The position numbers and the translations under genes were made by a program. A stretch of DNA of 64,000 nucleotides from Girardia tigrina. Its lineage: Eukaryota. The notes beneath the pieces were generated by a model. It was not told where the DNA came from, did not search any database, and worked only from the letters and a program-made list of their open reading frames with translations. Location of the stretch: NCBI GenBank assembly GCA_001938485.1, contig MQRK01194125.1, positions 5,661 through 69,660 on the forward strand. The letters are read 5' to 3'. Below are positions 2,625-57,746 of this stretch, piece by piece (position 1 is the first letter of the stretch; each line of letters starts with the position of its first letter).

Positions 2625-2850
2625 TTGTTTCCCCGGTATCGTGGATATCCCGTGGGGCGGATACGGAACCATGGTGCAGATGACCAAGAATTCATCAACA
2701 TTTTTGGAATCTTAACATCATCATAATTATGAATTATCGAAAATAATAATAAATTACTGTTATTTGGATTCATTCCATCGGGATCAATGAGATAAGTATA
2801 ATTTACTGTATAACCTCTTTTTATCCATTCATTGCAAGAGGGTTCTAGGT
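2625..2850 (-). CDS. Exons 28-29: start of fibrinogen-like repeat 3 (gene continues beyond window)
   Basis: EPSCNEWIKRGYTVNYTYLIDPDGMNPNN|NSKNVDEFLVICTMVPYPPHGISTIPGKQ; 47-nt intron at 2711-2757. Confidence 0.85.
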
Positions 2851-5800: not shown

Positions 5801-8800
5801 AATCTTTTATTGGTGTTAACCAAGACTTCGATTTTTAACAGGTTTCCCTATCAATTGACAAACATTTAAAACTTACTCCGTTTCAATATTCCATATTCCA
5901 ATTTTCCCTTAAAGATCTGGGAAAAGTTCTCTTCAAAAAACCAAAACATAAATCAAAAATATTTTTATAGAACAGGTTGATAGGTCTTTTTAAATAAAAA
6001 AATCCTTAAAGATTGTAAAATCCGTAAAAGGATAATAGTTATATTGAAGCTTTAAAATAGAAGTTTAAATTTAAAACCTACAAAATGCCGCTGGACCACA
6101 AATTAGGGGTCCCACTGTAAAATTGGAAGGATTTGGTGACTTATTCAAATCCGAAATGCATTTAATTGGAAGGTCTTCTTTTTTACGAATAAATCCAAAA
6201 TCTGATCCCGCATTTTTACCATCACAATTACAACTTGCAGTGGGGTCGGTGCATGAGTTGTACACTCCACACGCGCATTTTCCATTCGACCCACTACCGA
6301 AATAATCGAGATTTTTCCCGGAAAGTGTTTGAAGAAACGCCTTATTGTCCAATAATGTGGCCCCCTCCTGTTTAATTAACATTTTTATATCATTATTATT
6401 GTAGAATAGAAGTTATCAATAATGCAAAATAGAATAAAACTCACTTGACAGTCATATTTCACTTCTTGAGTACATGATCCAGAATCATCTATCAATTTTC
6501 GAATGGCAGGATCACTAGCTGGATAAGAAAAACATGTCTGAGGATCCTTATTTGGAGATGTAGGATTTTTTAATGGGCCCGGAAAACTTGAGTAATATCC
6601 ATTTGGAATACTTCCTGGAATTCTGTGGACAATCGTGAAAAAAAGTTAACCAAATTTTTTATGAAGTGTAATAAATGGAATAACGCTTACTTATTATGAG
6701 GAAGTTTTGTAACTGCAAATGATTTTGTTGTCACATCACACAAAGCTCTAATGGGCTCCAAAGGACCATCTCCATCGACATCTAACCAGACTACTCCATT
6801 TTTGATCAGTCCATAATTATCTTTTGCATCTTGACAATTCTTTGGAAAATCTAGATCATTACAAGTAATGATTTATATTAATTATGTTGATATGTACTGA
6901 AAGGTCGAGGTCCGCAAGCGAGAGGACCAATCGTGATAGTTCCAGATAAATAGTAGCCGTTCCCTCCAGTCAAAATTCCAGTCAAAGGCAGTAAAGATTT
7001 ATCAATTATTCGCCCGGTATCATAGCCAGGGCTGTGGTAATCTCCATCGCAAAAGCATGCTTTTTCTGGTGACTCGCATATGTTTATTTCTCCACATCCG
7101 CACTGTCAAATAATAATGATAATAAAAATAATAATCTTAATAATCTTGGAAATATGAATAATATAAATGATGTGAATATAATATTAATAATATTAATAAT
7201 TTTCAGAGCTATTGTTCATTTGGCTCTTTACGTTATTCAGAGAATGTGCATCTCCATATTTCTTTATTCCTCACTTCCCTCGTAACATCTATGATACAGA
7301 AATCATCATACCATGCTAATCTATTGAATCGGTATACTGATCCATCCTGGTTTATCAGCTAAACTCCACCCGCAAATATATTAAGTCTTGTCTGCTTTAC
7401 CACTTACCAAAGACAATGTTAAAAAATAAGGTCCCACTACGCACCCCTCTCTGCCATATATATTTATTTTAGATTTACTTTCTCCAAATTTCTCGGGAAA
7501 ATTCTTTATTAGATTGATTAAATTTCAGAAAATCTCAGTCTTTTAAAACATTACCGGAGAATCTCTATAGAAACTGTGAAAAGCTTTCTCCAGACCGATA
7601 TAAATTACGTGTACTTCCTGATCTCTGTATCTGCCTACTTTCTGAATCTCACAAAAAATGAAAATTTTTCACATCGTTCCTCTTCTTGATATAATAATAA
7701 ATTGTTATTTATCTATTTTCCGTTATAGGTATTTGAATGTTTACAACAATTCTTGAAGGACTTTACCCATAAATTCAAATAGAAAATTCTACGGAAATTG
7801 TTAGCATTAATCGGCCGCCTTTCCCATTGAATAGAGTCGTAACTCGCGCTGACTTTCATTCTCATGTACTTATAATTTTATGTAAACCAAATCTATTTCC
7901 AAACTACTTAGTTGATAATTGATCCATGTATAAAACTGTGCTGTTGGTTTCTTTGAATTTAACATGAAGGCGATGACTTCGTAGTCCGTTGACAAAATAA
8001 AGGAATAACCATAAGTTTTTTCCTCGGTATGTAATATCTTTTTTCCTAAGGTCCAATTGAATGCGAGCCATATGCAATTACCTTTTCCCTTTTTAATTCT
8101 GCTAGAATACTATCAACACTGGCATCTTAATTCAAAATAAACTTATTGAAGTTCAGAACGTTAAGATCCCGGCTTTCATAAGGGCTTTTTTTCATATTGT
8201 GAAAAGCTTCTTCACATGAGTATGCCCATGTTAGTTAATTTTTTAACCCTTCTAATACAACAATGCCAACTGTGGAATAACCACTTTATGAATCGTTTAT
8301 AGTAGTTACAGATTCCCAGAAAATGTCTCAAATTCTTCATGCAGTTTAGTATTTGAAATGGGAAATGAGTCCCCATAATCCTCTCGAATGCATTGATTAA
8401 AATCATTTCTGACCTAGTCATAAAATTATTGAAAATTATTCCTCTAAGATGTGGCCATTATTTTTTAAATTTGAGTCAAAATTTAAAATAAAAAAACTGA
8501 AAAGTAAAAGATTAAAGTCCATTTTATAAAAATCTTAAAACATTTTCCTCAAAATTTACAGCCATAAACGATTAAAATATTGAGAACAACGAATAATTAA
8601 ATACCAAAATTATTTTAAACTAACGAAACTAGAATAATTTATTAAAAAAAAACAAATTTAAAAAGAAAATTCATAAGAAAATGAAATAAATAAAGTATGT
8701 TCTAATGTGCTAAGATAATCATGATAGCCGGACAACTTTACAATCATTAGTTACGATCAGTGCTCGAAGTGGGAAAAAATAAGTGCCGGTATGCGGAAAC

Positions 8801-11800: not shown

Positions 11801-14800
11801 ATGCTTGTTTATAAACTTTAGTGTCTTTTTGAGAAGAAAGAAAAAAGCAAAAAGTAATGAACTTTTAAAAAATGTTTTAGTTTATTTTTAAGGTATTCCA
11901 TACCATAGCGATAATACCTCTTGAAACATTGGAATCATTTTAAAACAGAGGGTGGTAACAACGGGCTTGAAGGTTTCATGTGGCTGTTTTAAAAAGAATT
12001 GCGAACTTACTACATCATTATGCGTGCTGTACATTATTAATATCAACTCCAGGCCTCTCAAAATGTCTTCAACAATAGCTTTAACCTCTTTCTTCCTATC
12101 AAGTAGGCTTAAATTTGATAAAAAGATAAAAATCCTTTGTAGCCAAGTCCAGACTATAGAGTTAATTAGAAATTTCTTCAAACCCGCATTCATCCTCAGG
12201 AAACTTAGTAACAACAGCTGTTTGAACTAAGGCCTTGTCATTGAGGAGACAAACATCATTTCCAAAATTTCCCGAAGTCTTTTCATCATAATGGTGTCAT
12301 GCAAACAGTGTTGTAAATCCATATAGTACTCCCCATATACTATTGTATTTTTTCAACTAATGAAATCTAAAAATCTTGTCCTCCTTATCTTATTAGTTGC
12401 CTTCGGGATCTTGGAATTTTGAAAAGGAACCTCATATAGTTTTCTCAATTCCGACTTTGAAAAAGAATCATAGTAAAAGTTTCAAAGTCTCCTGAGTAAA
12501 GAGTAAAGTTATATTAATCCAAAGATTCTTGGCAGTCTGTATTTCTTTTGCAATTATTGATTTTTATGCACCCGATAATAAGCTAGTAATAGGCGCTCAT
12601 AGAATCCTGAATGAACTTCATTGTAACGTTGTTGTGATTGATGAAACGTAGTTTTACGTGAACTAATGCCTGCAAAAGAAGTCTCTCATGCATATGAAGA
12701 ATCTGAAGGAGACAGACAAAAACAAGCTGGCAAATCATTGCAAATAAGAAATGACATATAATACTGGCTTTGAACTTTCGTGGGACTCATTATTTTGAAG
12801 TGGTGGGGCATGTAGAACCATCTACACCCACAGATACTTAAAATTCTTAGACAAAATGAAGCAAATTCGACGTCATGAAAATCTTCTCATAATGCAGGAC
12901 TTTTACAACTATCCTACTCTCCATATATGAACCTGATGAATTGCTATTTATTCAAGAACATGGAATCCAAGCTGAGGGAACAAACGTTTACTTCCATTGA
13001 ACAAGTGTAAATGTTTTTAACTATGTTCTTGGCTGAGCGAATCCGTTACAAACTAGGTCATGAGATGGACCGCCAACAACATGATCTCTAAAACATTACT
13101 TTACGTGGTAGTGAACGTTACAATAAAGTCACGCAGAACTTATTGATATTCAAAGCCATTATTCTTTCTGTATCTGCTGGTTGGTGCATTATTTTATTAT
13201 ATAGTTCATTATATTAAAATTTATTTCATATATTTTTATTTATCCATACTAGTCGTTAAAAGATTTCACTGAAACATACGTTCTCTCTTACAATTACTAT
13301 TGCAAAAATAATATTCAATATTTTGACATCCTTACTCTTTAATAATATACGAACTCAAATAGATATGAATATCTTTTATCTTTTTGTCAAAGCAAGCATT
13401 AGAATATGTATTATTATTAGAATATGTATATTAAAGTGATTAATTATTCTAAATTGTATTTTTTGTTTATGGTTGAAAAATAACTATAATAAAACAATTA
13501 TTAGTGTTGAAAGCATCGACACAATTACTTTGTAAACATTTATTAATATTACATTTAGAGTCATCAAAACTTTTGGGAGTTCCTTCACCATTGTTGTTTC
13601 TGAATTTTTAATAATGATTATTCGAAAAAATTTCATAAATTTTCAATAACATTTATTATTATTTTAACTGTAATATATTTCATAAAATTATAAAAAATAT
13701 TTAAACGAATTTTAAAATTATTCCAATCTATAAAATGTCTTTAATTGATACATTAAAAATTTTTATTTTAATTTTTGAGAAATATTACTTATATTATAAA
13801 TTACTCTGTATTATTACATTTTAAATATAAATTTTATCAGATTATTAAATTTTCATTAATTTTAAAAATATAAATTCTGTTCGAATGATCAGTTATCGCA
13901 AATACAATAAAGTATACATGTTTTCAGTACACCCAAATAACCACACCACATTCATACACAATTTAAAATACTCCTCACAATTAGTAAAATAAAAAGTTGT
14001 GATACTCTAATATTTACTTGCATATAATCTGTCACAAACGCTGTATATACTAATATAAAGCAACAGTCAAAGGTTGACCCAGTTCTCGGCCCGGTTATTG
14101 TATAATAGCAATTTAGAAATGCATAAATTTGTTGATTTTATAACATTTTTAATGATAATTTTTTATTAATAATTAAAATGTATTCTCTCATGTATTAAAT
14201 TAATGTTGTTTGTATTTAGATATTTAATATAGACCTAATAGAAATCTTAAGGTAGGACTTCACTAATTAATAAACCATGCATCGGACACTAATGAATAGC
14301 TCAAGAAAAATAAAGTACCTTGTTTTCTGTTGTACTACTGCCCCATTTTTTATGTATTTTTCCATTGATATCAATATAATTAGTCGTAGTCAATAGTTCT
14401 AAAAAGCCATCACATTGAAATCTGAACAAAATTGTATATGAAGATTTATAATAAAATAAATTATAAGATGGGAAACTACTCCATGTCTTGGTAGCAGAAC
14501 TTTGAAGAGGCAACTATGGGTAACACGTAGGTCAACGGAAATTCGTAGGTGATTGTTCTATTTTCCGTAAGTGGTTTCGGATTAACAATTTTTTTCGGAG
14601 AAGTGTTGTCGTGATTAATGATTGTTATTCCAAGATTTGGTTTCATAACACACGTCACCTATACAAGGGTCAACATTAGATTAAACGATTTTTTAATTCA
14701 CTTACATCAATGAGTGGAAGCGGTCCTGTTCCATCAGGATCAATGCTATATACTCCTGATGGGGTACCTGGATTTTGTAGTAAATACTCGTGACAATTTA

Positions 14801-17800
14801 TGGCAGTTACTAAATTATTTTTGTTAAAAAAACTACTCAACCATAAATTCTATCTTACATTGACAATTTTTTCCGTCACCCGTAAATCCGCTATTACATT
14901 TGCATGAGTAACTGCCAACTAGGTTGGTGCAAGTGGCGTTTGTATTACATTTGTTCAAAACAGGATTGTTGCATTCGTTAATGTCCGTGCAGCTTAATTT
15001 TCCGTCACCTTCAAATCCGAGATTGCAAGAACATAAATTTTTATAACATTTTCCATTTTTGGCACAATCGGCATCTCCAAGACAAAATAGTTTATCTGTA
15101 ACATAATATGGTTAAAAGACGTTTGTGAAGCAGCTTAGAAACAAAACATCTTACTTTGACATGTGCCATTGTCTAATCTTACGTAGTTGTCCAAACAACT
15201 ACAATTGTAACTTCCGATGGTATCTGTACAAACTTCATTGATTCCACAAGTATTGGGGTTGTTCAAACATTCATTTATATCTAATTTGTAATATTTGATA
15301 TATTAAACTTTTAAATCAAGCATTCCCTTACTGGTACAAGTCATTAGACCGTCTCCTTTAAATCCAGCTTTACACTGACATTGACCCATACGACACAGTC
15401 CATTTGTATTGCAATCTTTATCCCCTGTGCATGGAGTATTTGCTGTTCACCAAGTAAAATAAACTATTTCTTTTATAAACTAAAATTTACTATATTCACA
15501 AATTCCTGGATACTTCGAACTACAACTTTTTTCTGCCCAAGGTAGCTGGTTTGATTTGGAACCATCAACAATGAAACAATTAGCTGATCCAGTTAATCCC
15601 GGTTCCTTACTGTTCCAATTCGTATATTCGAATGTTGAATTGTCTGACCAGAAAAACGTTGAAGGTTTACTTAGATTTTCTTGGAGACCTAAAAATAATA
15701 TTAAAAAATTACTAGTTTTTTAGTTGTTAACATAAATATTAGACACGTGTTTGTAAAAAATTTTTAATTTGTATCATTCTCGATTTATATTTTGAGTCTT
15801 TGTAACTGTTAGTTATATGTTGTTGTAAATCGGTTATTTTACTTGTAAACAACTCATAACAGAAATTCATATTGTGAATAAATTATTGTGTCTTTAAATT
15901 CGTGGGCCTCCAATCTCTGTAATGGTATTGAGCCTCTGGCTCTTTAGAGAGTCCACCCAAACTAAAGTCCTTAAGGGCCCCCCGATAGGCCTCCTACGGG
16001 GTCAGTGGCCTTCCACCTCTGAGCAGTCGGCTTGCCAGTAACGAACGACGAACCATGGAACTTGGTACCATGGCCGTACGGTGGACGCGTAACAACCGCG
16101 AAATGGGCACTTGAATTGTCCTCTTGCAGTCTTGTAATCGGCTGGCAGTCGGTATTGTAGGTGCGTCTCATCGGCATCGTCGTTCGACTGTATCCTCGAC
16201 ATACTCACAGTTGCGTCCGGCAACTGAGGATTGGATTGGTTTGATGTCGGCTCTTCCTCGTTCTCTTCTTCCAAGTTTTCTTCTCTCTGGGGGTTGGATG
16301 TTGGATGTCTTTAAATTCGTAAGAAATTAGTCACCAATAGACCAATTGTAAGCAGCAAACTATGTATTAAGTTGTTGAAAAAGGAATGCAAGTTTTTGAT
16401 TCTAAACTAAAAAATGTAACTCAGCACAGAAAAAACTATTAATCCAAAAAAAATCTATCAGAATCAAGACATTTTTACCAAAGAGAAACAAGTTTATTGA
16501 TTCCTCTAGCGTAGAACTCCTGCGTTTTTGGTGCGATGAAAGCGTTAAAGGCGTCTTTGGCGTCATCTTGGTTTTTGAAGCATTTATCCTTAATGAATTT
16601 GTCTATTTTATATTTATTTTGTATTTAGACACCTCATCAGAGGGCAATTCGGTTTTTAAGAAAGGCTATTCGAAAGTTGACTCATTTTAAATTGAACATG
16701 CAAAATTTGATCGTGATCTAAGATGTGTTTTCTTTTACACTGTCGACGCAATGTAATCAAATCTAATAGCCGCCGATATCATTAATACATTGACATAATA
16801 GCAGCCTTAGCCGGCCAGCAGATTTAATACCATTATTATTTCAATATCTACCGCTGCGGACGGTGTCAAAGAAAGCTCAGCTTTTTGATAATAATTTTAT
16901 ACGTGGTGCGCTCAATAGGTAGTGTGCCTAACATAGAAATAATATTCTGATTCCAATGAATTATTTTCATAACAAGCAAGTTATAAAGGTAATATTTGTG
17001 ATATTTGTTTTAATCTATTATTTTTGTTTAGGTTAGAGAACGCATAAATTCGAAAATGTCATTGGAAAACGTCCAATATCGAAGCGTTATTCGTTTCTTG
17101 TTAATGAAAGGGAAAATCCGGGAAGAAATATTCGTATATTCGAATATATAAACAGTTTAGTTCTGTTTATGGCGAAGAGAGTCCATCCATATCTACTGTC
17201 AAACGATGGTTCAACCATTTTCGATATGGTCGAACATTTGTTTCTGATGAAGAAAAGTCAGGCAGGCCACGTGAAATTGGCGAAGAAATAGCGAAAAATC
17301 GTGAAGTGTGAGCGACGAATCACTATCAGAAAACTGACAATGCGATTAAATGTCAGCAGAGGTACCATACAATCACTGCTTACGGAAACTGGAATTAGAA
17401 AATTGTGTTCACGCTTCGTGCCACAGTTTTTAACAGCAGACATGAAGGAACGGCGATTGATGTGCTGCCAGGAAAACTTAAACCTCTATGAATGTATTGG
17501 AGACCGCTTCTTACAGAATATTATGACAATGGATGAAACACCACTTGTCATTTATGTCCCAGAATCAAGACGTGAGTCTCATGAGTGGAAGTGCCAGGGG
17601 AAGAGTGTTCGAAGAAGATGCGATCATCAACCTCTCACAAAAAAGCTCTCATGCTCCTCACTTTTTGGGATGCAAATGGAATGATCCTTGCTGATTTTGC
17701 GGAAGCTGGTGTTCGTATCAACAGTGAATACTACTCCCGGCTCGAGCTTCAGGTAAAAAAGCTGAGAAGGAAGAGCAGAGTTTGTGAGTTATATTATTTG

Positions 17801-20800
17801 CACGACAATGCCCCCATCCACACAAGTGAGCTGTCAATGTCATCAATTGAGGGTTGTGGCCTCACCATGCTCTCTTACCCTCCATACAGCCCGGTTCTGG
17901 CGCCTTCCGATTATCATCTTTTCATCCACCTCAAACGAGCTCTCAGGGGTCAACATTTTGCTACGAAAAAAGACTTGAAGGATGCAGTCTCAAATTTCTT
18001 GGCTCAACAGCCACCGAAATTCTTTGAAAAAGCCTTTCTGGACCTTGTTGTGCCCTGGAAAAAATGTGTTGGTGTAAATGGACATTTCTTTGAGAAATGA
18101 TACCTTTATAACTTGCTTGTTATGAAAAATAAATTTCATTGGCATCGGATTATTATTTTTATGTTAGGCTCAGTACTTATTGAGCGCACCACGTAAGATG
18201 AAACGATACAAAAATTTAATATTCATAGAATCTCATTATTTATCCAGATAAAAATTTGTAAAAAATAAAATTTAGATAAAACTCAATAATTTCTAATCGT
18301 CATTATTTTTAATTTTCAAAGTTTTTTGTTTTCTAATAAATATTTTGAAAATTTCCTGTCTTTTCTTAACAATTTTCCAGTTTTACTTCGGTGAACAATC
18401 AATGTCGCAGTATCATAAATTATGTATAATTATATTCCTGAGAAAAGGAAGGGGAAGTTGAGGGGCAGTAATAATTTTTGGTAGACTTGAAAAATATTTA
18501 ATTGTTTTTAGAAATTTGACTCTGAACCTAACCTCATATTGACCATTATATCCTTGTTCGTTTATGCCGGAGTCTCGTTGAACAGAACCCCGGGGCAAAA
18601 CGAGGTTTACTTGTACATTCAATTCGAAAGGTTGAGTTTATGAAACGGCTTTTAAATATTAAACAACCTCTCTTTTCGTTGAAGATAATGAAGATAACGA
18701 TATAGAAATAAAAATTAAACGATCCTAACAGAGAATAAAATCTGAGATCCTGGATCAAGTCGTACAACAAATATCAAAATTATGTTTAAAATTTCTAATT
18801 TTTAACAGTGATAAACGGATTTAAATCACAAAAAAATATTTGAACAACTTTGCGTGTTACAAATAAAGGCTAACGTGACTGAAGTTTTCAACAGGACTGG
18901 CCAGGTCAGTTTAGCTTAAGATCACTCATTAATAGGATAAAGGACTCTTCTCTTTCTAATAATGAGATTTGCTCTCAACTTTTGTCTCGGCTTTCCATTT
19001 TTCGAAGTCTCATTCTGCGTGAAATAATATGATTTCTTACATTAAATTCATTTTTTGTATTTTATTGGAGTTGAATAACATTAATTTTTTGGTATACGAT
19101 ATGGTATAAGATACAGAAAGACTTCTTCGAAGTTTTAGGTTAAAATTCATATAAAATTTGTTCTGAAAGATCTAGATTACTTGATGTTTCGAGTCAACCA
19201 TAAATGTTAAGGCACAAATCGTGACGTGTATTTGCTTGTACTTGTTTGCGTTACATATATACATGTTCTAGTGTTGTGCTATAGATTAATATTTTGTAAA
19301 TTTATGTTTTACAAAATCAATAAATAAACGAATAACAATTTAAAGAATTATTTGTAACTTACACATAAGAGATTATTATTGTGAAAGTCTACAAATCATA
19401 CATAAAACCGAATTCCTGGTTTTCTATTTCTGTTAATTTCAGGTTAATACAATTCAATTGCCACTATTTGTTCATTGGGTTTGATAATTCTATTTGCAAA
19501 GTAATACAGTGAAAGCCGCTTAATAGGACCAGTAAAAATCTATTAATGGGAACACTCATGAAACTGTTTGACCCTTCAAACAACATGAAAGTCATGAAAA
19601 ACGTGTTTTTAGCGTAGGTCATACACCCACCCCAATCAACATACACATACACACGTAACAAAGAAGCAGGTCTTGACTGAATTTGTATTTACTGTATTTG
19701 TTCTTATCTCTTTAGCTGCAGAGAGTACCTGCTACATTTGTAGCACACAGCAAGAGGAAAAGTGTCCTGCAAGCAAACGTACAGTTAGTGGCGGTAGCCC
19801 CATACATTTACCATCCCAGGTACGTATGTATGTGTGTGTCGCCTAACTCGACATCAATCTTGCTAGAGCACAATGGGGAGGGTTGCAGACTGTCATTCAT
19901 TTTAAAATACAGTAAAGTAGTACAGAACTGTATTGCCCAATACTGTACATAGTTAAAGCGTTTAACGTACTGTTTATACGAAGAGTGTGTACTTCAGAGC
20001 TCTCAAACTGTTTAGACCATCGCAATCGGTTTGTAGGCAGTTTTAAACCGATGGCGACATTTAAAAACGCGCAAAATGTTGTTACAACTCGAAAAGTGTA
20101 CTTTGTCAAAAAATAACACCACTTCGCTTAATGGGACTAGTCGGTTAATAGGACCAGTTGGGCTTGGGACAAATGTGGTCCTATTAAGCGGCTTACACTG
20201 TAATACCTTTTTTCTTACTGTTCTGTGTTGTATTTATTTCAAAAGATTTTGTTTACCATAGTTTTTTTTTGCTATTTTTATTTATTAAAGAGGTTCACTG
20301 ATCGAACCAAAAATAATTTAAGTCAGCCTTTTTAACAATAAACATAGATCATTCTTTACTCTTACATAAAACGAAGTATGATAAAACTCACCAATCCAAT
20401 AGCTATTCCATATGTTTTTATTCCTTAAATAACTTTCAAGAAACATTTGTTCTCCGTAAGTAGCGATTGATATTAAATCGCCACCAGCTGAAGAACAAGC
20501 CTTTTGCGAAGCAGGTACCGAATCTTCTGGCACCGGTTTATAACATTTTCCATTGAAATATTCCGAAGTTGTCGGACATCGATAAAAGACTGAAGATAAT
20601 AATTATACAATTAAATAATCAAAAATATTAATATTATCAAAAATAAACGTAATTATAAACAATTAATTTTCTTAAGATCGGAACAAAGTCAACAGAAAAA
20701 TATCAAACAAAAGTTGTCATTAAAAACAAAAATAAAAGAAAAATTCTCGGCCAAAAATATAAAAGAACGAAAGATTTATAAATGAATCATCGGACAAGAA

Positions 20801-26800: not shown

Positions 26801-26853
26801 AAAGCTTTAATCAAATTATATTTTCGAAATACTAAACTTGCGTTCACAAGACT

Positions 26854-26892
<39 letters not shown>

Positions 26893-35800: not shown

Positions 35801-38800
35801 ATTTCAAAAGATGTGACAATTTTTGCAAGAAGACTTGGATAGAAGTCATTTTAAAATATTTTAATGAAGAAATGTATCTATAAAATTGAAATAAAATAAA
35901 TAATTATTTTAAATATTCTCTTGATAATAAATAAAAGTTTTATTTTCACTTTCTTTCGATTGAAAGAAATAATGATGATAGTGGATATGGACAAAAAGGA
36001 ACCGCAACTCAACAACACTGGATAAAAAAGCAGTCTCAAATGATAAGTTATCAAAACATTTTCATTTAAAGAAGGCCGACCGACTGGCATGAAACATGAA
36101 AATATGAAACTGATTTACTATTGTCCCTTCGGGGAATATAACAACTGACGATTGCTTAAGGGTCTAGTGATAAAAAGAGTAAGTACGAGTGATTGCTTAG
36201 TGATAAGCTGGTAAGTGACATTATTTGAGAAGATACCGACATGGTTGTGGTAGTCGCATGTGATATATATGATAGCGATTGCGTGACTATATCGATACAA
36301 GAAACCATGAAATTCTGCAATACCAAACAATGAATGAGAGAGTTGTCTAACTAGAAGACACTCATTTTCTCACAGAAGGGTTTATGAGAAAGAATGAAAC
36401 TGTTATCTTATATCTTGTCTGGTAAATAAGTTGCATAACCTATGTAATCACTTTTACATTGTAATTTTGGCCTCTCTCACCTAACCATTTGTGCTATTAT
36501 AGTAGATGAAACACCATTTTTGACCCATGTCTAAAATGATAAGCTTTATAAACAGTGGCAGTTTGAGACATAGTTGAGGTGTATGATGTAATTTATATAT
36601 AATTATACTCAATTCACCTTTATTAATGCTTGAACAATTATTTAATAATCACTGTGAGTATGACCGGGATTATTTTTGACATACTTTTATTTATAAGACA
36701 ATACTAAAGTTATCTTTCTTCAAAAACTTCAACAAGAGTTTTTTTTTAATCCTTAAAATTTATTTATCTAATTTGCGTTTCTTGAAATAATAATTTAGTT
36801 TAATTATAAGTATAAAGTCAATATTGTATTGATTAATAATACTAATATGATTTTCAATACATCTATTCACATCACAACTTGAATTGCTACTAGCACAATT
36901 CTACATAAAACTTACGTCGTTAGTCATCGATCATGATTGATAAATTAAAATTCTATTAATAAACCTCTAATTACGGTTGAATTTACAATTTGAATTACAA
37001 AATAATTTTAATAAATGAAAATAATTTTATTTTCAAAAATATTTATGATTAAAATACTACTATATATTTATTGATTAAAATATAGTAATTTAATTTTAAA
37101 GTTGTTATTGACATTTTTATATTGTCAAAATAATCCGACGGTTCAAAAGATTCAAAATATCAATCGTCAATCTCGGTGGGAGAAGCATAATTCTAAAAAT
37201 AACATACAATAAATATCACTCGAAAGTATTCCTCACAATTATGAAGTGTAATAAAAGAATATTAAATCACATCATTAAGTATTTAATACTCACCAATAAT
37301 ACACCATCCTTTGCCAAAGTGATCGTTTGATTTTTTAGTATTAAAGTGACGGATTTTGCGAAGGACACTTTGTTGTTGATTCCTCGGTGTTCGTTGGCCG
37401 TGACAATTTGGAAGGGTGTTAGACTGGCGGCAACCGTATTATTTTTGAAACATGTTTCTGTTAATCTGTAGGAACAAATCCCCATAAAATGGTGTACGAC
37501 ATTATCGAAAGAAACATAATGTGGATCTCCCCAAGCGACGCATTGATTTATTTCTGAAATTAAATTAGGGATTATTTTTTTTAAAAAAATATACTCAGAA
37601 AATCGTGTTTATTGTTATTTAGTGTGATATTTTGGAAAAAAGAAAATATATCATGTTAAAAATATAGAACAAATTACTGAAGCATGTTTTGCCGTCCCCA
37701 GAGAAGCCAGGATTACAGACACATTTGTATGAGCCATATGTGTTAATACATTTAGAATTTGGATCACATTTTGCCATTCCTGATATTGAACACTCGTCGA
37801 TGTCTGTCAAAATATTGAGCATATAATCCGATTTATTAAATATTTATTATATTTAATTAATATCATAATAATATTCATTGATTTTTAAAAATCTCATGAG
37901 AAAAAAGAATCAAAGCAAAAATGTATTTTTAATAATGAAAAAATATAAATTATTTCAAAGTATTTTTTAATGTAATTTAAATTAGATTTTATTAAATTAA
38001 TTTAAAAATCAATTTAATAATTTAATTTATTAAATTTGAGTTTTAATTGAACATATTTATAAAAAAAACGAAATTCTAAAAAATATATTAAATGATAAAT
38101 ATTACAAATATTTTATTTTCCAAATGTACAAAAAATAATAATTAATTATTATTCAAGAAAGAAAATTTTTATTAAATCAAAATAATAATTTGTATCATAA
38201 AGAGATTTTTAATAATTTTAATTTTCAGTAATTTTAATTTTAATAATTTAATTTTAATATAATTTTAATTTTTAATAATTTAAATGTTTCAATAACCATC
38301 CTAATGTTGTAAATGTCCATAAACTTAAAGTAAACACATAATACATATTTGTTTTATTATTCATGTCTTTAGCTGAATAATTATTTAATTCTTTTTTTTA
38401 TTTTTTTAAAACACACCAAAACATTTTCATGTTCAGTTAACAAAAGTCCAGGATAATATACTAAATTTATTCAACAGGACATTTTTATCTTTTATAAACC
38501 ATTTTTGCAACTCACTTTAGACATTTAAACATGGTTTTAAATGCTTTATTAATAATGCATCAGTGAATATGTTCTCATGATAAATAAATCAGAAAAGTAA
38601 GAAAGATAACAATTGATAATTTCTATAGATAGGAAGTAGCAAGAAAGGAAGTTAAAGATGCTGAGTTATTAAAGAAAAGGCAGATAGGTTGTTTAACACT
38701 ATTCTTAGGAAGATTTACTTTTAATAAAAAAGAAAATCCAAATTCATCTGTAGTCTTGTAAGGATGGAGTAGATTGTCGAGAGTGCAAACCCGTCTTCTA

Positions 38801-53800: not shown

Positions 53801-55906
53801 AAAATTAAAGAATCTTTCAAAGCCAATTATTTTAAGTCCATGGTTGAGCAACAAAACTGTAATGTATTCTTTAAAATAAATCAAATCTCTTGTAAGTTAT
53901 GATTTTTACTTGTTAGGATTATTAAAAATACAAGAATAATTACAAGGGTAATTATTTAGTTTCTGAAATTCCCAAAACATTCATTAAAATGATATTAACA
54001 AAAAAAAGTTAAGAAAACTTTAATAATTAATAACAAATTTTCTCTTTCGTATGCAAAAGTTTGGGGCTTTTTCGTTCCAGAAACGATTTATCTTTACTTT
54101 CAATTATCTGCTACAACTATAGTCTCTGCATTACAAAAATGATAAATACAACTACCTCAAGTTAACTCAATGGGACCCCCTCAGACAAATCAAACACTAT
54201 GACTTACCTTGTAGAGAAGAGATGGACGCAGTGAAAATTACTAAAGCATAGAAGTTACTTACGTATCGAAATTTTCGCTAATGTATCACAGTTTTTTATC
54301 GTATTTTTATGAAACTGTTTAACGTAAGTCGTTTTATTATCCATTCTTATAGCAGCGTACAATACAAGGATGACTGATGAAAATTCGGAAGAAATGTTAA
54401 GAATAACCATCAGCGGATTATATCCGAATTTTGATGGAATTTTAAATAAAGACCATTCAAATTTCCATCATTCGCATTAGGGTCTGAAGTAGCTATTGTT
54501 GGATATTGTAACTAAATTTAGTTTTAAATCTATTTTTAATCTGACTCGCAAATGACCAAAAGGTTTCCTCCAACAATAATATATGAAGAATGAACAAATC
54601 ATTTTAATAATAATTTATTCTGCAAACAACAATTGAAGTACAAATATAAATTCAACTCTATCAGTACGCTAAAATTCAAAGATCACACTTCGATCAAACA
54701 GCTACAACAACTTCTTAGTTCGAGCGATGCTAGAATAATTTATTTAAAACTTAACTTCTCCTATACATGATACTAAATTTCTCTTATTATTTCTTTAGTA
54801 AAAAATGATTTTACAAAAATTAATAAATCAAGTTTACCGCACATATAATTCAAATTTAGTTTAATTCTTCTTTTTGAGTGGTAAAATGTTGAACTGTAAC
54901 TGAAATAATTATTGCTTATATACTAGTTTTTTCTAACCTTGAAAATTGAATAACTAAAACAAATCTCAAAATATTTACAAATATTCTATAAATTTTATTA
55001 AAATAACTATTATAATAATCAAAAAATTATTAATTTTAACCAGAGTATTATTTTTAATTTTTTATTAGATTTTAAAATTTAATTTATATTTTTCGGAACC
55101 CCAACACTATGTCGATTTTTATTAATTTTGTTTTTATGATATTTGTTACAAATTTCTTATTATGTTAATAAAAATGTTAACGATATCTTCTTTAATTTTA
55201 TTAATAAACGATTTTTAAGGAAATAAACATAATTCATTTAAGACCGTTTTTCGTGAAAGGTATGTTTTTTTGAAAAAGGAATGAAATGTGTCTTCAGCCC
55301 ACGTCAAAAGTTTGGAAAGTTCATTCGGCCCACTTACGGAAATATTTACCCACCCCTGTTGTTGAGGGTAGAAATTGTTAATAATAACGATTTATACTTT
55401 TTAAAAACATTTTTTTTGAAATACAAAACCGAAATTAGAAGTAAAATATAATTTTAAAAAAAATATTTTTTTGAAAATAATAAAAAGAAAATCTATAATA
55501 AGTATTTATTAAAATGTAATTAATTTCCCAATATACTGAAATAATAATCCAAATAATATTATAATTCTAAATTATTTTGACTAACCCGTCGGACAATAAA
55601 ATCGAAGCTGATATTGCTGACAAGTCGAGGTATCGTTTTGATCGGAGTTCAAGCATATGAGCCCATTCTTGCTGCAAGGCATTTGAAACTTATCCGCTGT
55701 TTTTTCGGGCGGAATTCCCGTGCCAGCCACTTGACATTCTACTTTATCTGGGGCAGTACAGACCGATGGATATGACTGAAACATAAATTATATACATCTT
55801 AAACATTCTTTTCATACTTTTCGTATATTTTGCACTGTTAATATTTGATCTGATTCTCTTGGATCGTTCATCGTTATCCATTCTGACCATTTTCGAGCTA
55901 CGGGAT
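2625..55906 (-). CDS. Large multi-exon extracellular mosaic protein (WxxW-EGF-VWD-C8-TIL-EGFx4-CLECTx3-EGFx4-Caspr-type fibrinogen-like x>=3); FCGBP/zonadhesin/mucin-like; partial at both ends
   Basis: Manually spliced exons: 55818-55906, 55586-55775, 37678-37803, 37294-37553, 33236-33534, 32907-33181, 30127-30305, 29864-30071, 29694-29816, 27128-27250, 26905-27081, 25729-25947, 25516-25683, 24506-24674, 24216-24460, 20392-20589, 15491-15688, 15332-15442, 15155-15280, 14859-15095, 14706-14809, 14480-14658, 14319-14421, 6898-7102, 6691-6850, 6445-6622, 6082-6367, 2758-2850, 2625-2710. All are GT-AG with matching phases; 5114 nt open frame. Confidence 0.88.
3750..4600 (+). mobile_element. Degraded mariner transposase remnant
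   Basis: Decayed VTG.EK(W), QNDNA and LPH.P motifs in order; many stops. Confidence 0.55.
5130..5900 (-). mobile_element. Degraded Tc1/IS630-like remnant
   Basis: Decayed PPYS...F..FWHLE-like C-terminal motif near 5230-5270. Confidence 0.35.
6082..7102 (-). CDS. Exons 24-27: end of fibrinogen-like repeat 1 and whole repeat 2
   Basis: CGCGEINICESPEKACFCDG...DTGRIIDKSLLP...IGPLAC; NCQDAK...WLDVDGDGPLEPIRALCD...CTQEVKYDC...CACGVYNSCTDPTASCNCDG...DFGFIRKKEDLP...VGPLIC. Matches the Caspr/Neurexin IV motifs IDPDGSGP, CACG...CNCD, DAG...LP, VGPLRC. Confidence 0.9.
7200..8430 (-). mobile_element. Gypsy pol remnant (RT connection/RNase H)
   Basis: LRHFLGICNYYKRFI motif in ORF 8212-8421. Confidence 0.6.
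8758..9512. mobile_element. hAT-family non-autonomous element (MITE)
   Basis: TIRs cagtgctcgaagtg / cacttcgagccctg; perfect 8-bp TSD GTTACGAT (8750-8757, 9513-9520); subterminal AAGTGCCGGTATG repeats. Confidence 0.9.
9771..10293. mobile_element. Solo LTR
   Basis: Termini TGTGAG...CTCATA; 5-bp TSD ATTAC on both sides. Confidence 0.65.
10430..11150 (+). mobile_element. Degraded mariner (same family as the 28.3 kb and 30.6 kb copies)
   Basis: ILFHDNVKPY...YSQDLDPTDYHFF in ORF 10889-11086. Confidence 0.8.
11880..12600 (-). mobile_element. Degraded integrase-like transposon remnant (Ginger2/KRBA2-like?)
   Basis: Only weak motif resemblance in ORF 11888-12214; heavily decayed. Confidence 0.3.
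12620..13170 (+). mobile_element. Degraded Tc1/mariner remnant
   Basis: IDET, MQD and SYSP.MN.. motifs in order. Confidence 0.45.
13505..13979 (-). mobile_element. Solo LTR (Gypsy-type family starting TGTGAGG)
   Basis: TG...CA termini; perfect 5-bp TSD ATTAG (13500-13504, 13980-13984); homologous to 3235-3450 and 41476-43254. Confidence 0.85.
14319..15688 (-). CDS. Exons 17-23: C-terminal half of CTLD3, four EGF domains, start of Caspr-type fibrinogen-like domain 1
   Basis: FFWSDNSTFEYTNWNSKEPG; four EGF cysteine patterns (two with D/NINEC); NCHEY...SGVYSIDPDGTGPLP...C...CYQDMEFQC...WGSS. Six introns of 47-59 nt. Confidence 0.92.
15904..16305 (-). mobile_element. GC-rich 402-bp retro-type insertion with 15-bp TSD
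   Basis: Direct repeat TGTCTTTAAATTCGT at 15889-15903 and 16306-16320; minus ORF with an acidic stretch and FKCPFRGC. Confidence 0.65.
16902..18193 (+). mobile_element. Full-length mariner (DD34D), frameshifted transposase
   Basis: TA TSDs; imperfect TIRs of about 90 bp starting cgtggtgcgctcaata; transposase ~17056-18100 with SGRP, FVPQFL, TMDET, HDNA and YSPVLAPSDYHLF. Confidence 0.93.
19507..20200. mobile_element. pogo/Tigger-like MITE
   Basis: TIR cagtg(a/t)aagccgcttaataggacca at both ends; TA TSD. Confidence 0.85.
20392..20589 (-). CDS. Exon 16: N-terminal half of C-type lectin domain 3
   Basis: RCPTTSEYFNGKCY...ACSSAGGDLISI...EQMFL...YWIG; acceptor ttcag, donor gtgagt. Confidence 0.9.
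21772..23052 (-). mobile_element. ITmD37E (DD37E) Tc1/mariner-superfamily transposon, full length, inactivated
   Basis: TIR aggactgagtgcgaaaatattactaactttaaa at both ends, TA on the right; MDDETY, (W>stop)PDLATCHY and NPP.CPELRPIERYW, with 37 residues between D and E after correcting one frameshift. Confidence 0.88.
24216..25947 (-). CDS. Exons 12-15: C-type lectin domains 1 and 2
   Basis: CPQNSWSYEGYCY...CGNQGGHLAT...YVG...FQNWATGHP...DCSENYPAIC; CAEGWKEIGGKCV...CAKYGGDLV...YWFGL...WISADC...FLCEKP. Confidence 0.9.
26770..26854 (+). mobile_element. Penelope pseudo-LTR 3' end emerging from assembly gap, inserted in (TA)n
   Basis: Near-identical to 35487-35570; contains GAAACATGTC; (TA)n on both sides of the gap. 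Confidence 0.75.
26905..27250 (-). CDS. Exons 10-11: two EGF domains
   Basis: DINECTDKTANCSVYATCYNTHGSYKCICQNGYEGDGNTC; CSFHQDATCDSNALCTDLPNGGFSCNCVEGSFGDG; 46-nt intron. Confidence 0.92.
27608..27969 (+). pseudogene. 28S rRNA gene fragment (dispersed pseudogene in an intron)
   Basis: Conserved LSU blocks gaaagatggtgaactatg, ggggcgaaagactaatcgaa.catctagtagctggttccctccgaagt, ttctcaaactttaaatggg, tttttggtaagcagaactggcg, with several substitutions. Confidence 0.92.
28300..29095 (+). mobile_element. Degraded mariner
   Basis: LDNAKPN...SNSPDLAPTEYHSF...QKCVDNMCAYFD in ORF 28685-29017; 3' TIR-like end. Confidence 0.8.
29694..30305 (-). CDS. Exons 7-9: TIL, TILa/EGF-like, cbEGF
   Basis: CGANQHYQSRTSGCQASCDNP...GCVCNDGFLRSGTSCKPKEQCGCY; GDVWFTDFC...CRCLKGFEG; DIDECSRGSYVCSPDGDCINTLGNYDCKCKVGFSGDG. 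Confidence 0.92.
30590..31500 (+). mobile_element. Degraded mariner
   Basis: Homologous to the 28.3 kb copy; 3' TIR acaaatttcttacttgatgacctaa followed by TA. Confidence 0.75.
32262..32372. repeat. (TTATA)n pentanucleotide microsatellite
   Basis: Direct tandem tatattatat repeats. Confidence 0.95.
32527..32748. mobile_element. piggyBac-like MITE
   Basis: TTAA on both flanks; TIRs ccaattaacgccga / tcggcattaatggg. Confidence 0.7.
32907..33534 (-). CDS. Exons 5-6: C-terminal half of VWD and C8 domain
   Basis: VTVSVPDTYANQLCGMCGNMNGNSNDE...WGNSW; CSVLTNPTGPFSTCHALVDPQTIYPSCYFDMC...LCSSYQIYADQC...NWRPATGC; 54-nt intron. Confidence 0.93.
33861..34616 (+). mobile_element. MULE (Mutator) transposase C-terminus and 3' terminal repeat
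   Basis: ALAFLPPDEI...WF...Y...FPPTIW...PRTQNVVEAWHRR; terminal sequence ending cgggattttgaaccgctctc. Confidence 0.8.
34617..35570 (-). mobile_element. Penelope-like element: truncated RT with inverted pseudo-LTR
   Basis: INLSNFELT.EE..IL..G.NH, IIITKFDKG, FLFTGEWYIQEDGVAMGSPLAPTLASIFM, YKRYVDDVF; inverted repeat at 35407-35510. Confidence 0.88.
35411..35449 (-). ncRNA. Hammerhead ribozyme core (Penelope-type minimal type I, degenerate)
   Basis: Minus strand CTGATGA-t-GATGT-atgtaa-ACATC-GAAACATTTC. The inverted plus-strand copy has the palindromic GAAACATGTC (35492-35501). Stem I is not intact in this copy. Confidence 0.65.
37294..37803 (-). CDS. Exons 3-4: calcium-binding EGF and N-terminal half of VWD
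   Basis: [70 protein letters not shown]...NEHRGINNKVSF. Confidence 0.92.
39934..40359. mobile_element. PIF/Harbinger-like MITE
   Basis: TIR ggctcgttcgtaaaatacataac at both ends; 3-bp flanks TCA/TTA; internal repeat gtgtg.cactttgtgacaag. Confidence 0.75.
41476..46990 (-). mobile_element. Degraded Ty3/Gypsy element (gag-PR-RT-RH) with 3' LTR 41476-43254
   Basis: VLDTGAP (~46220), SSPWN...KKD...IRVCVDFQKLN (45483-45689), FKHFLYGKKFLLTTDHKAI (~44380); the LTR starts TGTGAGG at 43254 and is homologous to solo LTR 13505-13979. Confidence 0.8.
41687..42953 (-). mobile_element. Full-length mariner nested in the Gypsy LTR
   Basis: TIR g(g/t)ctgtgtcgtaaaaaa with TA TSDs; WIPHSI, HDNARPY, PPYSPDCNLC; stop codons present. 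Confidence 0.88.
46999..48630 (+). mobile_element. Gypsy 5' LTR and gag with two CCHC zinc knuckles, truncated
   Basis: LTR starts TGTGAGG at 46999; ORFs 47460-47861 and 48081-48596 with CWTCHEEGHVRREC and CSHCNGKGHLRTQC. Confidence 0.85.
50270..50753 (-). mobile_element. Solo LTR; about 330 bp near-identical to 60791-61122
   Basis: TG start on minus strand; CGTA(T) on both flanks; direct homology to 60791-61122. Confidence 0.65.
50852..50979. repeat. Long hairpin (about 53-bp arms)
   Basis: acttcaatttcatcgagattcaatttatt...agtgaatttttcaaagtttattca pairs with tgaattaactttgataaattcactaataaattgaatctcgatcaaattgaagt. Confidence 0.85.
51508..51674. mobile_element. Short pogo/Tigger-like MITE
   Basis: TIRs cagtgcgctccgtatatatagaag / cttcaaaatatgcggagtccactg; TA TSD. 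Confidence 0.7.
55586..55906 (-). CDS. Exons 1-2: mucin WxxW (CysD) domain
   Basis: DPVARKWSEWITMNDPRESDQILTVQNIRK|SYPSVCTAPDKVECQVAG...CSKNGLICLNSDQNDTSTCQQYQLRFYCP; WxxW plus the GLxC...C..Y..RFxC pattern; 42-nt intron at 55776-55817. Confidence 0.85.
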
Positions 55907-57746
55907 CTGAAATTAAGATTTAAACATAAAATCATGGTATTCAAGCAGATATTTTAAGTTGACAAAAATTTCAATAAAAGGATACGGAGCGTTCACAACG
56001 ACTCATTTCTCTCTTTAAAAGATTTAATATTACAAGAATAAAACTGGATATTTATAACGTAACGGGATTAAATTTTGAGGGGAAACATATGGAATAATTT
56101 AGGAGATTAATTATTCCAATAATTGCATAGAAATTGGGATTTAGAATTCCCGTTAAAGTATTAGAAACTTTATGATTATACATAAAGTGTCTTAGTAGAG
56201 TACTCTATTTTTATTGGAAATAAACTTCAAAAAAATATAAATAAAGTCAAGGCCCATTCGTGGAGAAGTGTCACGTAGCATTTTTCGTTCTATTTTATTA
56301 TTTTTTAAAAAAATAAAATTTCCAAAAATCGTATTATTTTCAAATTACACCCGAATTTCAATTTGTTAAAAGTAATCCCCTTATTGAAACAGAATGTATT
56401 TGGGATTAAATCAAATAAATAAGAAAATATGTTGAAAATTGGATATATTTCCTTGTAAAACTGTTTAAAAATATTTTATTTGTAAATAATATATTAGGGC
56501 CTTTCGATAATATGGGGTCGAGCTTCAATACCATTATTAATGTCTTGTGCAAGGGACACTTCAATACAAACGATAGATTGTCTTTTTACAACAAGAAAAA
56601 GAACATGATTTACTTTCATTATCCGAACGGTTTCCTTTAAAACTTTTGCAATTATTTTCATTTTGCAAAATAATTTGTAAAGTTTTTTTTTAATTTAAAA
56701 TTTTAACAAAAATTAAGTAATAATGTAAAACATAAAAAATAAATAAAGTTTATTAAACTAAAAGAACAAAAAATCAATAAAACTCAAATAATTGGGCAAA
56801 AAAAGTACTTAGAGTTTTAAAAATCTTTAAAGTTTATGTTTATTAAAATTGACATATTTTAAAAGAAAAATATTTAGTAAAAATTTTTAAATAAGAATTA
56901 TAAAATAAATAATAAAAACAATAAATTTGGTAAAATTTTTAATGTAGGACGAAATTATTTGGAAAGAAATTAAAGTTAAAGTAAGTTTAATATTTTTTAT
57001 AAAATTATTTTGAAAATAACAAGTTTATTATCAAATAAATTTATAAGTTAAATAGCTTCTTAAAAAAGTAGTAAAATTCCTGAGATAAATTTTAAGAGTG
57101 AAAGTTTAAATTTATACAAAAGTAAAAATTTTATTTTAAAGAAAATTTTATGAATGAATTTTGGAGAAACGATTAAATTGTTGAGAAGAGATTTGTTTAA
57201 ATTTGTGTGTAATTTCCATTAATAAATTTTTGTGATATTATGACTTTTAATCTTGAATCAAACATTATAAAAGATAATGTCAACGTAACTGACATCAAAA
57301 ATTTGTATTTATTCACAAATATTTTCTACAGAGAAGTCTATGCTCTATGATTTTTTTAGGTCTGTTTATACTAATTTCTGTTTAAACTAATGTTGAAACC
57401 TTACTTTAGATATGACTTTGTGTTGTAATGATTCATGTGGTACATTCAGTAGGTAATTTTATATTTGACTAAGAAATTAAATTATAAAATAGAAAATATG
57501 TTGAAATTTAGGAAAATTATTTTTTTACTTTATAATGTAATGAACTATTTCAAAACTTAATGGATCAAGTAAAAATCAAACCCCCTAAAGAGGTAGGATA
57601 CAATGTTTTCCTAAATTAAAAATTAATATCACTTTACAATAAATTGAAACCTTGAAATTGAAATCTGAAACCTTAACTTTCAGACTATGTTTATACAAAA
57701 TATTAATTGATTTTGTTTTAATTTATTACTTTACCGTCAATTCGAA

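What the first reader, a model, noticed from the sequence alone, without database searches (positions are those of the whole stretch)
2625..55906. Hidden ~1700-aa mosaic gene joining mucin/glue modules (WxxW, VWD-C8-TIL), 9 EGF, 3 C-type lectin domains and tandem Caspr-type fibrinogen domains
Seen: 29 phase-compatible exons give an open frame that the ORF track shows only in pieces. Established: VWD-C8-TIL with EGF and lectin domains characterises FCGBP, zonadhesin, gel-forming mucins and invertebrate adhesive proteins (sea star Sfp1, Macrostomum adhesion proteins). The Caspr/Neurexin IV fibrinogen-like module belongs to septate-junction/neuronal adhesion proteins. I know no named protein with this combination. 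Inference: a lineage-specific secreted mucus, adhesive or innate-defence scaffold built by exon shuffling.
Basis: partly seen in the sequence, partly recalled or inferred. Interest (0 to 1): 0.85.

Follow-up and report, generated by a model that had tools for sequence, protein, structure and literature searches.

The report
Giant secreted flatworm scaffold glycoprotein gene
This is a real but partial view of a roughly 6,000-amino-acid secreted protein gene of a planarian; the gene is already catalogued but unstudied in Schmidtea, and it belongs to an old, apparently unnamed animal family built around seven repeats that fold like the end-cap of collagen.

Summary
The 29 exons are real: all GT-AG, 1,705 codons, no stops. 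They are an internal slice of the gene, with no start or stop. It is the orthologue of Schmidtea mediterranea dd_2649/SMESG000076582 (5,992 aa, signal peptide, 'vwd large mucin-related gene'; PMC6453901), about 68% identical over the 222 residues I could compare, and not functionally studied in the papers searched. The rest appears to lie on two other scaffolds: repeats 4-7, a second VWD-C8-TIL, about 45 EGF, Kazal, TSP1, Kazal, cystine knot. The N gap is intronic; an annelid protein aligns straight across it (32%, E 2e-177). The gene is not lineage-specific: the core occurs in Trichoplax, molluscs and an annelid, which also has the three lectin domains. The 'fibrinogen' repeats are Caspr-type, but a predicted structure matches the collagen C-propeptide (COLFI) fold (Z 15.1) far better than fibrinogen (Z 5.5), without collagen's interchain cysteines. 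Only the N-terminal lectin-WxxW-EGF-VWD-C8-TIL head was found solely in planarians; its order echoes flatworm adhesion protein ap1. Best guess: a gland-secreted, disulfide-linked cohesive scaffold. No RNA reads could be laid. An earlier scan note saw the same repeats on this DNA.

The parts
55818..55906 (-). Exon 1 of the visible model, WxxW first part; starts at an acceptor, so the true 5' exons (signal peptide + CTL in the orthologue) are not in the model
55586..55775 (-). Exon 2, WxxW second part
   Evidence: Pfam PF13330 5.9e-12
37678..37803 (-). Exon 3, calcium-binding EGF, after the 17.8-kb intron
   Evidence: joined directly to WxxW in the orthologue
37294..37553 (-). Exon 4, VWD first half with GDPH motif
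   Evidence: PF00094 1.3e-13; motif
33236..33534 (-). Exon 5, VWD second half with CGMCG motif
   Evidence: PF00094 2.8e-13
32907..33181 (-). Exon 6, C8
   Evidence: PF08742 5.7e-20
30127..30305 (-). Exon 7, TIL
   Evidence: PF01826 4.1e-9
29864..30071 (-). Exon 8, TILa-like stretch plus EGF
   Evidence: weak Pfam TILa and EGF
29694..29816 (-). Exon 9, calcium-binding EGF
27128..27250 (-). Exon 10, calcium-binding EGF; end of the planarian N-terminal head
26905..27081 (-). Exon 11, 'EGF0', homologous to the first EGF after the signal peptide in molluscan family members; 46-nt intron from exon 10
26395..26769 (.). Assembly gap inside intron 11; not filled
25516..25947 (-). Exons 12-13 (25947-25729, 25683-25516), C-type lectin-like domain 1, no EPN/QPD or WND motif
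24216..24674 (-). Exons 14-15 (24674-24506, 24460-24216), C-type lectin-like domain 2, no canonical sugar motifs
20392..20589 (-). Exon 16, first half of C-type lectin-like domain 3
15491..15688 (-). Exon 17, second half of CTL 3 (EPG where the annelid has EPN)
14859..15442 (-). Exons 18-20 (15442-15332, 15280-15155, 15095-14859), four EGF domains
14319..14809 (-). Exons 21-23 (14809-14706, 14658-14480, 14421-14319), first two thirds of Caspr-type/COLFI-fold module 1
6898..7102 (-). Exon 24, end of module 1, across the 7.2-kb intron
6082..6850 (-). Exons 25-27 (6850-6691, 6622-6445, 6367-6082), module 2
2625..2850 (-). Exons 28-29 (2850-2758, 2710-2625), start of module 3; ends at a donor, and the gene continues outside the window (contig C194125 4031-3377, then apparently scaffolds C229976 and C169010)

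Best explanation
The window holds an internal 1,705-codon slice of one single-copy planarian gene, orthologue of S. mediterranea dd_2649, encoding a secreted glycoprotein of about 6,000 aa. Order: signal, CTL, WxxW, EGF, VWD-C8-TIL, 3 EGF | EGF0, 3 CTL, 4 EGF, 7 Caspr-type/COLFI-fold modules, EGF, second VWD-C8-TIL, about 45 EGF, Kazal, TSP1, Kazal, cystine knot. SHOWN: exon structure, modules, orthology, the old conserved core, and the predicted fold of the repeat. INFERRED mechanism: it is made in gland cells and works as a cohesive scaffold of mucus or adhesive secretion. The C-terminal cystine knot would dimerise chains tail to tail, as in VWF and mucins. The VWD assemblies (GDPH, CxxC) would pack it in granules and link heads, possibly with GD/PH self-cleavage held by disulfides as in FCGBP. 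Calcium-binding EGF arrays would form stiff spacers. The seven COLFI-fold beads and the degenerate lectin-like domains would give multivalent protein or glycan binding rather than collagen-style trimerisation. It has no PTS domain in the part checked, so it would cross-link a gel rather than form the hydrated gel itself.
For: Exon model. Orthologue: 5,992 aa, signal peptide, no TM or GPI, collinear without gaps, about 152 of 222 residues identical by my hand count over exons 1-4. Annelid collinearity from exon 11 onward in one HSP, 32%, E 2e-177. Rest of gene: C229976 has modules 4-7 and the following EGF; C169010 has VWD second half, C8, TIL, 46 EGF-like motifs, Kazal, TSP1 and CK, and its VWD groups with the family's central VWD at 97/93. 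Single copy: the only other module-bearing scaffold found is the Caspr gene on C246727. Expression, indirect: four probable RNA runs hold 0.59 of the words of 14300-15700, and 0.62 is expected for spliced RNA. Fold: pLDDT 97; procollagen C-propeptide TM 0.59, E 2e-8, Z 15.1; fibrinogen TM 0.29, Z 5.5. The two extra cysteines of collagen III's base region are absent in module 2. Gland link: orthologue enriched in 'Parapharyngeal' cluster 12 (logFC 1.26), the same cluster as the VWD protein dd_238. The head's order matches the RNAi-tested cohesive protein ap1 (PMC9229212, PMC6745481).
Against: The joins between the three scaffolds and the 5' exons were not observed in this assembly; two EGF and the first half of the second VWD were not found either. 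The single-cell enrichment is weak (AUC 0.531; detected in 10,812 cells). That 'Parapharyngeal' means gland cells is my recollection of the atlas, not checked here. The ap1 resemblance is domain order only. The structure was predicted for an oyster module, not a planarian one. Dimerisation, cleavage and binding are by analogy only. The S. mediterranea CDS is itself partly a gene prediction.
Confidence: 0.55

Rival explanations
1. Same gene, but the protein is an internal structural matrix fibre (fibrillin-like function without TB domains) of basal lamina or parenchyma, whose COLFI-fold modules bind collagen or its processing partners.
For: About 45 tandem EGF; conservation back to Trichoplax; best human hit FBN2 and 'core glycoprotein' class; detected in many cells; COLFI fold.
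Against: Cote et al. find core ECM mostly from muscle, whereas this gene is assigned to the parapharyngeal cluster. Molluscan members keep only a few EGF after the VWD, so the long rod is dispensable. No TB domain among the Pfam hits of the Trichoplax and annelid homologs.
Confidence: 0.28
2. A secreted innate-defence agglutinin that traps microbes through its lectin and 'fibrinogen-related' domains.
For: Three to four CTL folds; the annelid CTL3 keeps EPN; FCGBP-like VWD with GDPH.
Against: The window's CTLs lack EPN/QPD and WND. The repeats are not ficolin/FREP-type fibrinogen domains: only the first 60 or so residues match those. The gene is single copy with a fixed seven modules across phyla, unlike expanding immune families.
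Confidence: 0.12
3. The exons belong to two genes or a mis-scaffolded join, since molluscan homologs show the two halves in the opposite order.
For: Molluscan proteins align to model 1079-1905 at their N-terminus and to 63-630 near their C-terminus; an N gap lies near the boundary.
Against: The actual boundary is the ungapped 46-nt intron between exons 10 and 11. The window's VWD is not the family's central VWD; that one is on C169010. The S. mediterranea model has the same order and spacing, and the annelid spans the gap junction.
Confidence: 0.04

Closest known systems
Schmidtea mediterranea dd_2649 / SMESG000076582.1 (Cote et al. 2019, PMC6453901, Supplementary Data 1)
   Same: Orthologue: collinear WxxW-EGF-VWD, about 68% identical by hand count; C8, CTL2 and EGF block at a constant +155-aa offset.
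   Different: Complete (5,992 aa, signal peptide and an N-terminal CTL). Labelled 'vwd large mucin-related gene / FBN2'; the table does not name the seven modules or the WxxW; no functional study found.
Dimorphilus gyrociliatus DgyrCDS8121 (CAD5119519.1, 5,422 aa)
   Same: EGF0, 3 CTL, 4 EGF, 7 modules, VWD, TIL, 40+ EGF, TSP1, CK-like end; 32% identical over about 1,300 aa.
   Different: The model starts at EGF0 with no evident signal peptide, so it may be 5'-truncated; whether it has the planarian head is unknown.
Uncharacterised 2,600-aa molluscan proteins (Pecten XP_033732371.1, Mercenaria XP_053408175.1, Dreissena XP_052258852.1, oyster LOC105335200, Octopus LOC115209782) and Trichoplax H2 RDD42651.1
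   Same: EGFs, 7 modules, EGFs, VWD-(C8)-TIL, EGFs, Kazal-like, TSP1, Kazal-like, CK-like end.
   Different: No head block and no CTLs; molluscs have a short EGF array, Trichoplax a long one.
Flatworm adhesion protein ap1 (Mlig-ap1 core, Mile-ap1, Tmed-ap1)
   Same: Order signal-CTL-EGF-VWD-C8-TIL-VWC-EGFs matches the head of dd_2649.
   Different: ap1 has no WxxW, no COLFI-fold modules and no second VWD or CK reported; Mlig-ap1 has GRK repeats, absent here; sequence orthology not tested.
Caspr/CNTNAP/Neurexin IV 'fibrinogen-like' module
   Same: Clear homology; predicted structures match at TM about 0.9.
   Different: Seven in tandem in a secreted protein; no laminin-G, discoidin or TM segment; the genome's Caspr gene is elsewhere (C246727).
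Fibrillar procollagen C-propeptide (COLFI; PDB 5K31, 4AE2)
   Same: Whole-domain fold match, Z 15.1, 174 of 202 residues aligned.
   Different: No triple helix or coiled-coil stalk, and the two extra base-region cysteines are absent.
FCGBP / zonadhesin / gel-forming mucins
   Same: VWD-C8-TIL with GDPH; WxxW (CysD-type); CK; head VWD 37% identical to a fish zonadhesin-like D domain.
   Different: Only two, widely separated VWD assemblies; no PTS domain, MAM domain or TM segment.

Membership tests
dd_2649 orthogroup | Collinear N-terminal sequence | tested here: met
   About 152 of 222 identical, no gaps, by hand
dd_2649 orthogroup | Same domain spacing downstream | tested here: met
   +155 offset at WxxW, C8, CTL2 (970 vs 815) and EGF block (1240 vs 1085)
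dd_2649 orthogroup | Signal peptide + N-terminal CTL | tested here: inconclusive
   Not found on this scaffold up to its end
Unnamed EGF / 7-module / VWD / Kazal-TSP1-CK family | Seven tandem modules followed by the conserved EGF | tested here: met
   Modules 1-4a on C194125, 4b-7 and EGF on C229976; the scaffold join is inferred
Unnamed EGF / 7-module / VWD / Kazal-TSP1-CK family | Central VWD-C8-TIL and Kazal-TSP1-Kazal-CK tail | tested here: met
   C169010; tree support 97/93; first half of that VWD and the last CK exon not seen
Gel-forming mucins (MUC2/5/6) | PTS-rich O-glycosylated domain | tested here: not met
   Maximum Pro+Thr+Ser 30% per 100 aa in the 1,907-aa model, 28-34% in full-length homologs; C169010 part not measured
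Gel-forming mucins (MUC2/5/6) | Three N-terminal VWD assemblies | tested here: not met
   One N-terminal and one central VWD
Gel-forming mucins (MUC2/5/6) | C-terminal cystine knot | tested here: met
   CxGxC, CC and CxC pattern in homologs and on C169010; judged by pattern, no Pfam hit
Caspr/Neurexin IV | Laminin-G and discoidin domains, TM segment | tested here: not met
   None in the model or homologs; orthologue has 0 TM
Fibrinogen-related domain (FReD: ficolin, FREP, tenascin) | Full fibrinogen C-terminal fold | tested here: not met
   Only profile positions 1-60 match; TM 0.29, Z 5.5
COLFI fold | Whole-domain structural match | tested here: met
   Z 15.1, TM 0.59, for an oyster module of the same family
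Fibrillar collagen | Gly-X-Y helix, stalk, interchain cysteines | tested here: not met
   Modules abut directly; two cysteines absent in module 2
Fibrillin | TB (8-cysteine) domains between cbEGF arrays | tested here: not met
   No TB hit in the Trichoplax or annelid homologs; not scanned on C169010
Flatworm ap1 | CTL-(EGF)-VWD-C8-TIL-EGFs order | tested here: met
   Head of dd_2649 and exons 3-10
Flatworm ap1 | Sequence orthology to ap1 | not tested
   No ap1 sequence was returned by the searches
Flatworm ap1 | Adhesive-gland expression and RNAi loss of attachment | not testable with these tools
   Needs in situ hybridisation and RNAi
Calcium-dependent sugar-binding C-type lectins | EPN/QPD plus WND motifs | tested here: not met
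   Absent in CTL1-3
FCGBP-type self-cleaving VWD | GDPH motif | tested here: met
   Model position 144; cleavage itself not testable

The most novel reading that the evidence does not exclude
An undescribed, pre-bilaterian family of giant secreted scaffold proteins uses seven tandem collagen C-propeptide-fold domains outside any collagen; the Caspr/Neurexin-IV 'fibrinogen' module is the same COLFI-fold unit; and in planarians this core carries a head related to the cohesive glue protein ap1, making dd_2649 the triclad counterpart of ap1 and a testable link between old matrix proteins and flatworm adhesives.
Probability: 0.25. Interest if true: 0.7.

Novelty: new member of a known kind. Interest (0 to 1): 0.45.

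Why it matters
The gene itself is not new: it is the orthologue of a catalogued Schmidtea protein. What the analysis adds is that this 'mucin-related/fibrillin-like' entry belongs to a family conserved from Trichoplax to molluscs, annelids and flatworms, which databases label inconsistently (fibrillin, zonadhesin, FCGBP-like, neurexin-4-like, uncharacterised) and for which I found no paper. Its fixed seven repeats have the collagen C-propeptide fold, which bears on where that domain and the Caspr module come from. Planarian RNAi and single-cell atlases make the family's function directly testable, including whether it is a triclad cohesive glue component.

Tried and rejected
The spliced protein was built only inside scripts (phase check, local BLAST and HMMER); the joined step was left out of all search tools, and exons were searched by reference. 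A word-index search with one exon found nothing (length-limited, uninformative). Two profile searches listed no full-length planarian protein. PDB sequence search with exon 27 was blank. Upstream genes of the annelid model could not be fetched (protein too long); 10 kb upstream of the Trichoplax model held only more EGF exons. Paper searches for homolog locus ids, for the domain combination and for tandem COLFI found no description; dd_2649 appears only in PMC6453901. The single-cell atlas paper was not available. Rejected: two tandem paralogs or mis-scaffolding at the gap; the head VWD as a recent copy of the gene's own central VWD (it falls outside that clade, but on a long branch; the annelid and one Trichoplax VWD were not in the tree); dd_3183/dd_18786 as orthologue (different N-terminus); C246727 as a paralog (it is Caspr).

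Full report
Observation. The window is AT-rich animal DNA (about 30% GC) with 42-77-nt mini-introns, at G000:C194125:5661-69660 of a 1.43-Gb, 255,254-scaffold assembly. From the orthologue below it is a planarian; I did not determine the species. Reading the minus strand and fixing splice sites gives exactly 29 exons between 55906 and 2625, all AG/GT-bounded and phase-compatible, 1,705 codons without a stop. Pfam, exon by exon, confirms WxxW, VWD, C8, TIL, EGF and C-type lectin. There are 9 EGF, 3 CTL and two and a third Caspr-type modules. The joined protein was used only inside scripts and never sent to a search tool.

The gap. The N run 26395-26769 lies in the 957-nt intron between exon 11 (EGF) and exon 12 (CTL1), near TA repeats, with phase 1 on both sides. 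I did not fill it. Two lines show continuity. The annelid protein DgyrCDS8121 aligns to model residues 634-1906 as one HSP (32%, E 2e-177), running from the EGF into the CTL with no gap at the join. The S. mediterranea orthologue keeps a constant +155 offset before the gap (WxxW tryptophan 162 vs 7; C8 495-569 vs about 346-413) and after it (CTL 970 vs 815; EGF block 1240 vs 1085). Indirectly, four probable RNA runs from one sample hold 0.59 of the 31-mers of 14300-15700, where 0.62 lie wholly in exons, as expected for a spliced transcript.

The model is a fragment. It starts at an acceptor and ends at a donor. Two more in-phase exons just beyond the window finish module 3 and start module 4. 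Profiles from homologs find the apparent continuation on scaffold C229976 (rest of module 4, modules 5-7, and an EGF matching the family consensus) and on C169010 (second half of a VWD, C8, TIL, 46 EGF-like motifs, Kazal, TSP1, Kazal, cystine knot). The joins between scaffolds are inferred from homology. The only other scaffold found with such a module is the Caspr/Neurexin IV gene (C246727), so the gene looks single-copy. The 5' exons were not found on this scaffold.

It has a catalogued orthologue. Supplementary Data 1 of Cote et al. 2019 (PMC6453901) lists dd_2649 / SMESG000076582.1: 5,992 aa, signal peptide, no TM or GPI, 'vwd large mucin-related gene', best human hit FBN2, cell type 'Parapharyngeal' cluster 12, AUC 0.531, log fold 1.26, 10,812 cells. 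Its printed first 400 residues read signal, CTL, then WxxW, EGF, VWD collinear with exons 1-5, about 152 of 222 identical over exons 1-4 by hand count. That model has the junction across the 17.8-kb intron. The id occurs in no other paper searched, in the main text only in a methods remark, and in no supplementary file but Data 1, so it is not in the RNAi table by that name.

It is not lineage-specific. A HMMER search with the module-3 exon returned proteins with 4-7 tandem matches. These and two profile searches define a family: bivalves, gastropods and cephalopods (about 2,600 aa), Trichoplax H2 (4,339 aa, 45 EGF) and the annelid Dimorphilus (5,422 aa), with partial relatives in a hemichordate, cnidarians, amphioxus and a brittle star. 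Complete members run EGFs, seven modules, EGFs, VWD-(C8)-TIL, EGFs, Kazal-like, TSP1, Kazal-like, cystine knot. Exon 11 is the EGF that opens the molluscan proteins. The three CTLs after it are shared with the annelid. Only the head (CTL, WxxW, EGF, VWD-C8-TIL, 3 EGF) was seen solely in planarians, and the annelid model may be truncated there. In a tree, the C169010 VWD joins the family's central VWDs (97/93), while the head VWD lies outside, nearest zonadhesin-like domains (37%), on a long branch. Its order matches the flatworm cohesive protein ap1 (PMC9229212, PMC8621496, PMC6745481), by architecture only.

The repeat. It is homologous to the Caspr/Neurexin-IV module (atlas TM about 0.9), and exon 27 matches the module profile at 99% probability. 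By sequence only its first 60 residues resemble fibrinogen or collagen C-propeptide. An AlphaFold model of an oyster module (pLDDT 97) matches procollagen C-propeptides over the whole domain (Foldseek E 2e-8, TM 0.59; Z 15.1, 174 residues) and fibrinogen only weakly (TM 0.29, Z 5.5). In collagen this domain trimerises through a coiled-coil stalk, calcium and an interchain disulfide (PMC5353611). Here the modules abut with no stalk, and module 2 keeps the outer two base-region cysteines but lacks the inner two, which from my own knowledge form the interchain bond. I infer monomeric beads. I recall that domain databases place Caspr and COLFI in one structural superfamily; I did not check this and found no paper saying so.

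Mechanism. Shown: architecture, secretion signal in the orthologue, GDPH and CGMCG in the head VWD, five calcium-binding-type EGFs in the window, CTLs without EPN/QPD or WND, and no PTS region. Inferred by analogy with VWF, mucins and FCGBP (GDPH cleavage held by disulfides, PMC8267560 title): tail-to-tail cystine-knot dimers, VWD-driven packing and linking, calcium-stiffened EGF rods and multivalent binding beads, giving a cohesive scaffold in gland secretion (0.55). Rivals: internal matrix fibre (0.28), immune agglutinin (0.12), split gene or misassembly (0.04).

Verdict. A real gene, correctly read but truncated; orthologue of a catalogued, unstudied protein; member of an old family that seems unnamed. 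It fails the tests for mucin, fibrillin, Caspr, fibrinogen-related protein and collagen, while plausibly working like a VWF/FCGBP/ap1-type cohesive scaffold. Interest 0.45.

Noticed in passing
L003:3784-4710 and L005:3986-4651 (+), contig about 72.8-93.7 kb: Protein kinase gene in two large pieces, DYRK-like by its motifs, on the opposite strand about 11 kb upstream of exon 1 (Pkinase 7e-45).
   Followed up: partly
L004:6279-6932 (-): ODR4-like ORF (5e-12) lying between the two kinase pieces on the opposite strand, so apparently nested in its intron.
   Followed up: partly
L006:1821-2141 (-) and L006:6035-7626 (+): Ankyrin-repeat exons, and a GC-rich retroelement remnant with zinc-knuckle-like, protease-like and RT ORFs.
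   Followed up: no
window 17585-18097, 34536-35405, 48051-48593, 57827-58240: Transposon remnants in and near the long introns: mariner/DDE transposase, reverse transcriptase, zinc knuckle, Mos1-type HTH.
   Followed up: partly
window 55907-64000 (gap 60922-60944): The expected signal-peptide and first CTL exons were not found here or further up the scaffold; they may lie in a gap or on another scaffold.
   Followed up: partly
G000:C246727:8100-24700 (L041, L042): The genome's Caspr/Neurexin IV gene, with a single module of this type.
   Followed up: partly
G000: At least 147 C-type lectin matches genome-wide, many as identical copies on neighbouring scaffold numbers, suggesting haplotype redundancy in the assembly.
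   Followed up: no
P0012, P0013, P0020, P0030, P0034, P0091, P0151: Other proteins with tandem modules of this type: two at the C-terminus of fish and amphibian uncharacterised proteins, brittle-star proteins mixing them with CTL, and a jellyfish membrane protein alternating them with EGF.
   Followed up: partly
P0189: An Octopus vulgaris member, named 'mucus 2' by its source, has five copies of the EGF0-type unit before the modules.
   Followed up: no
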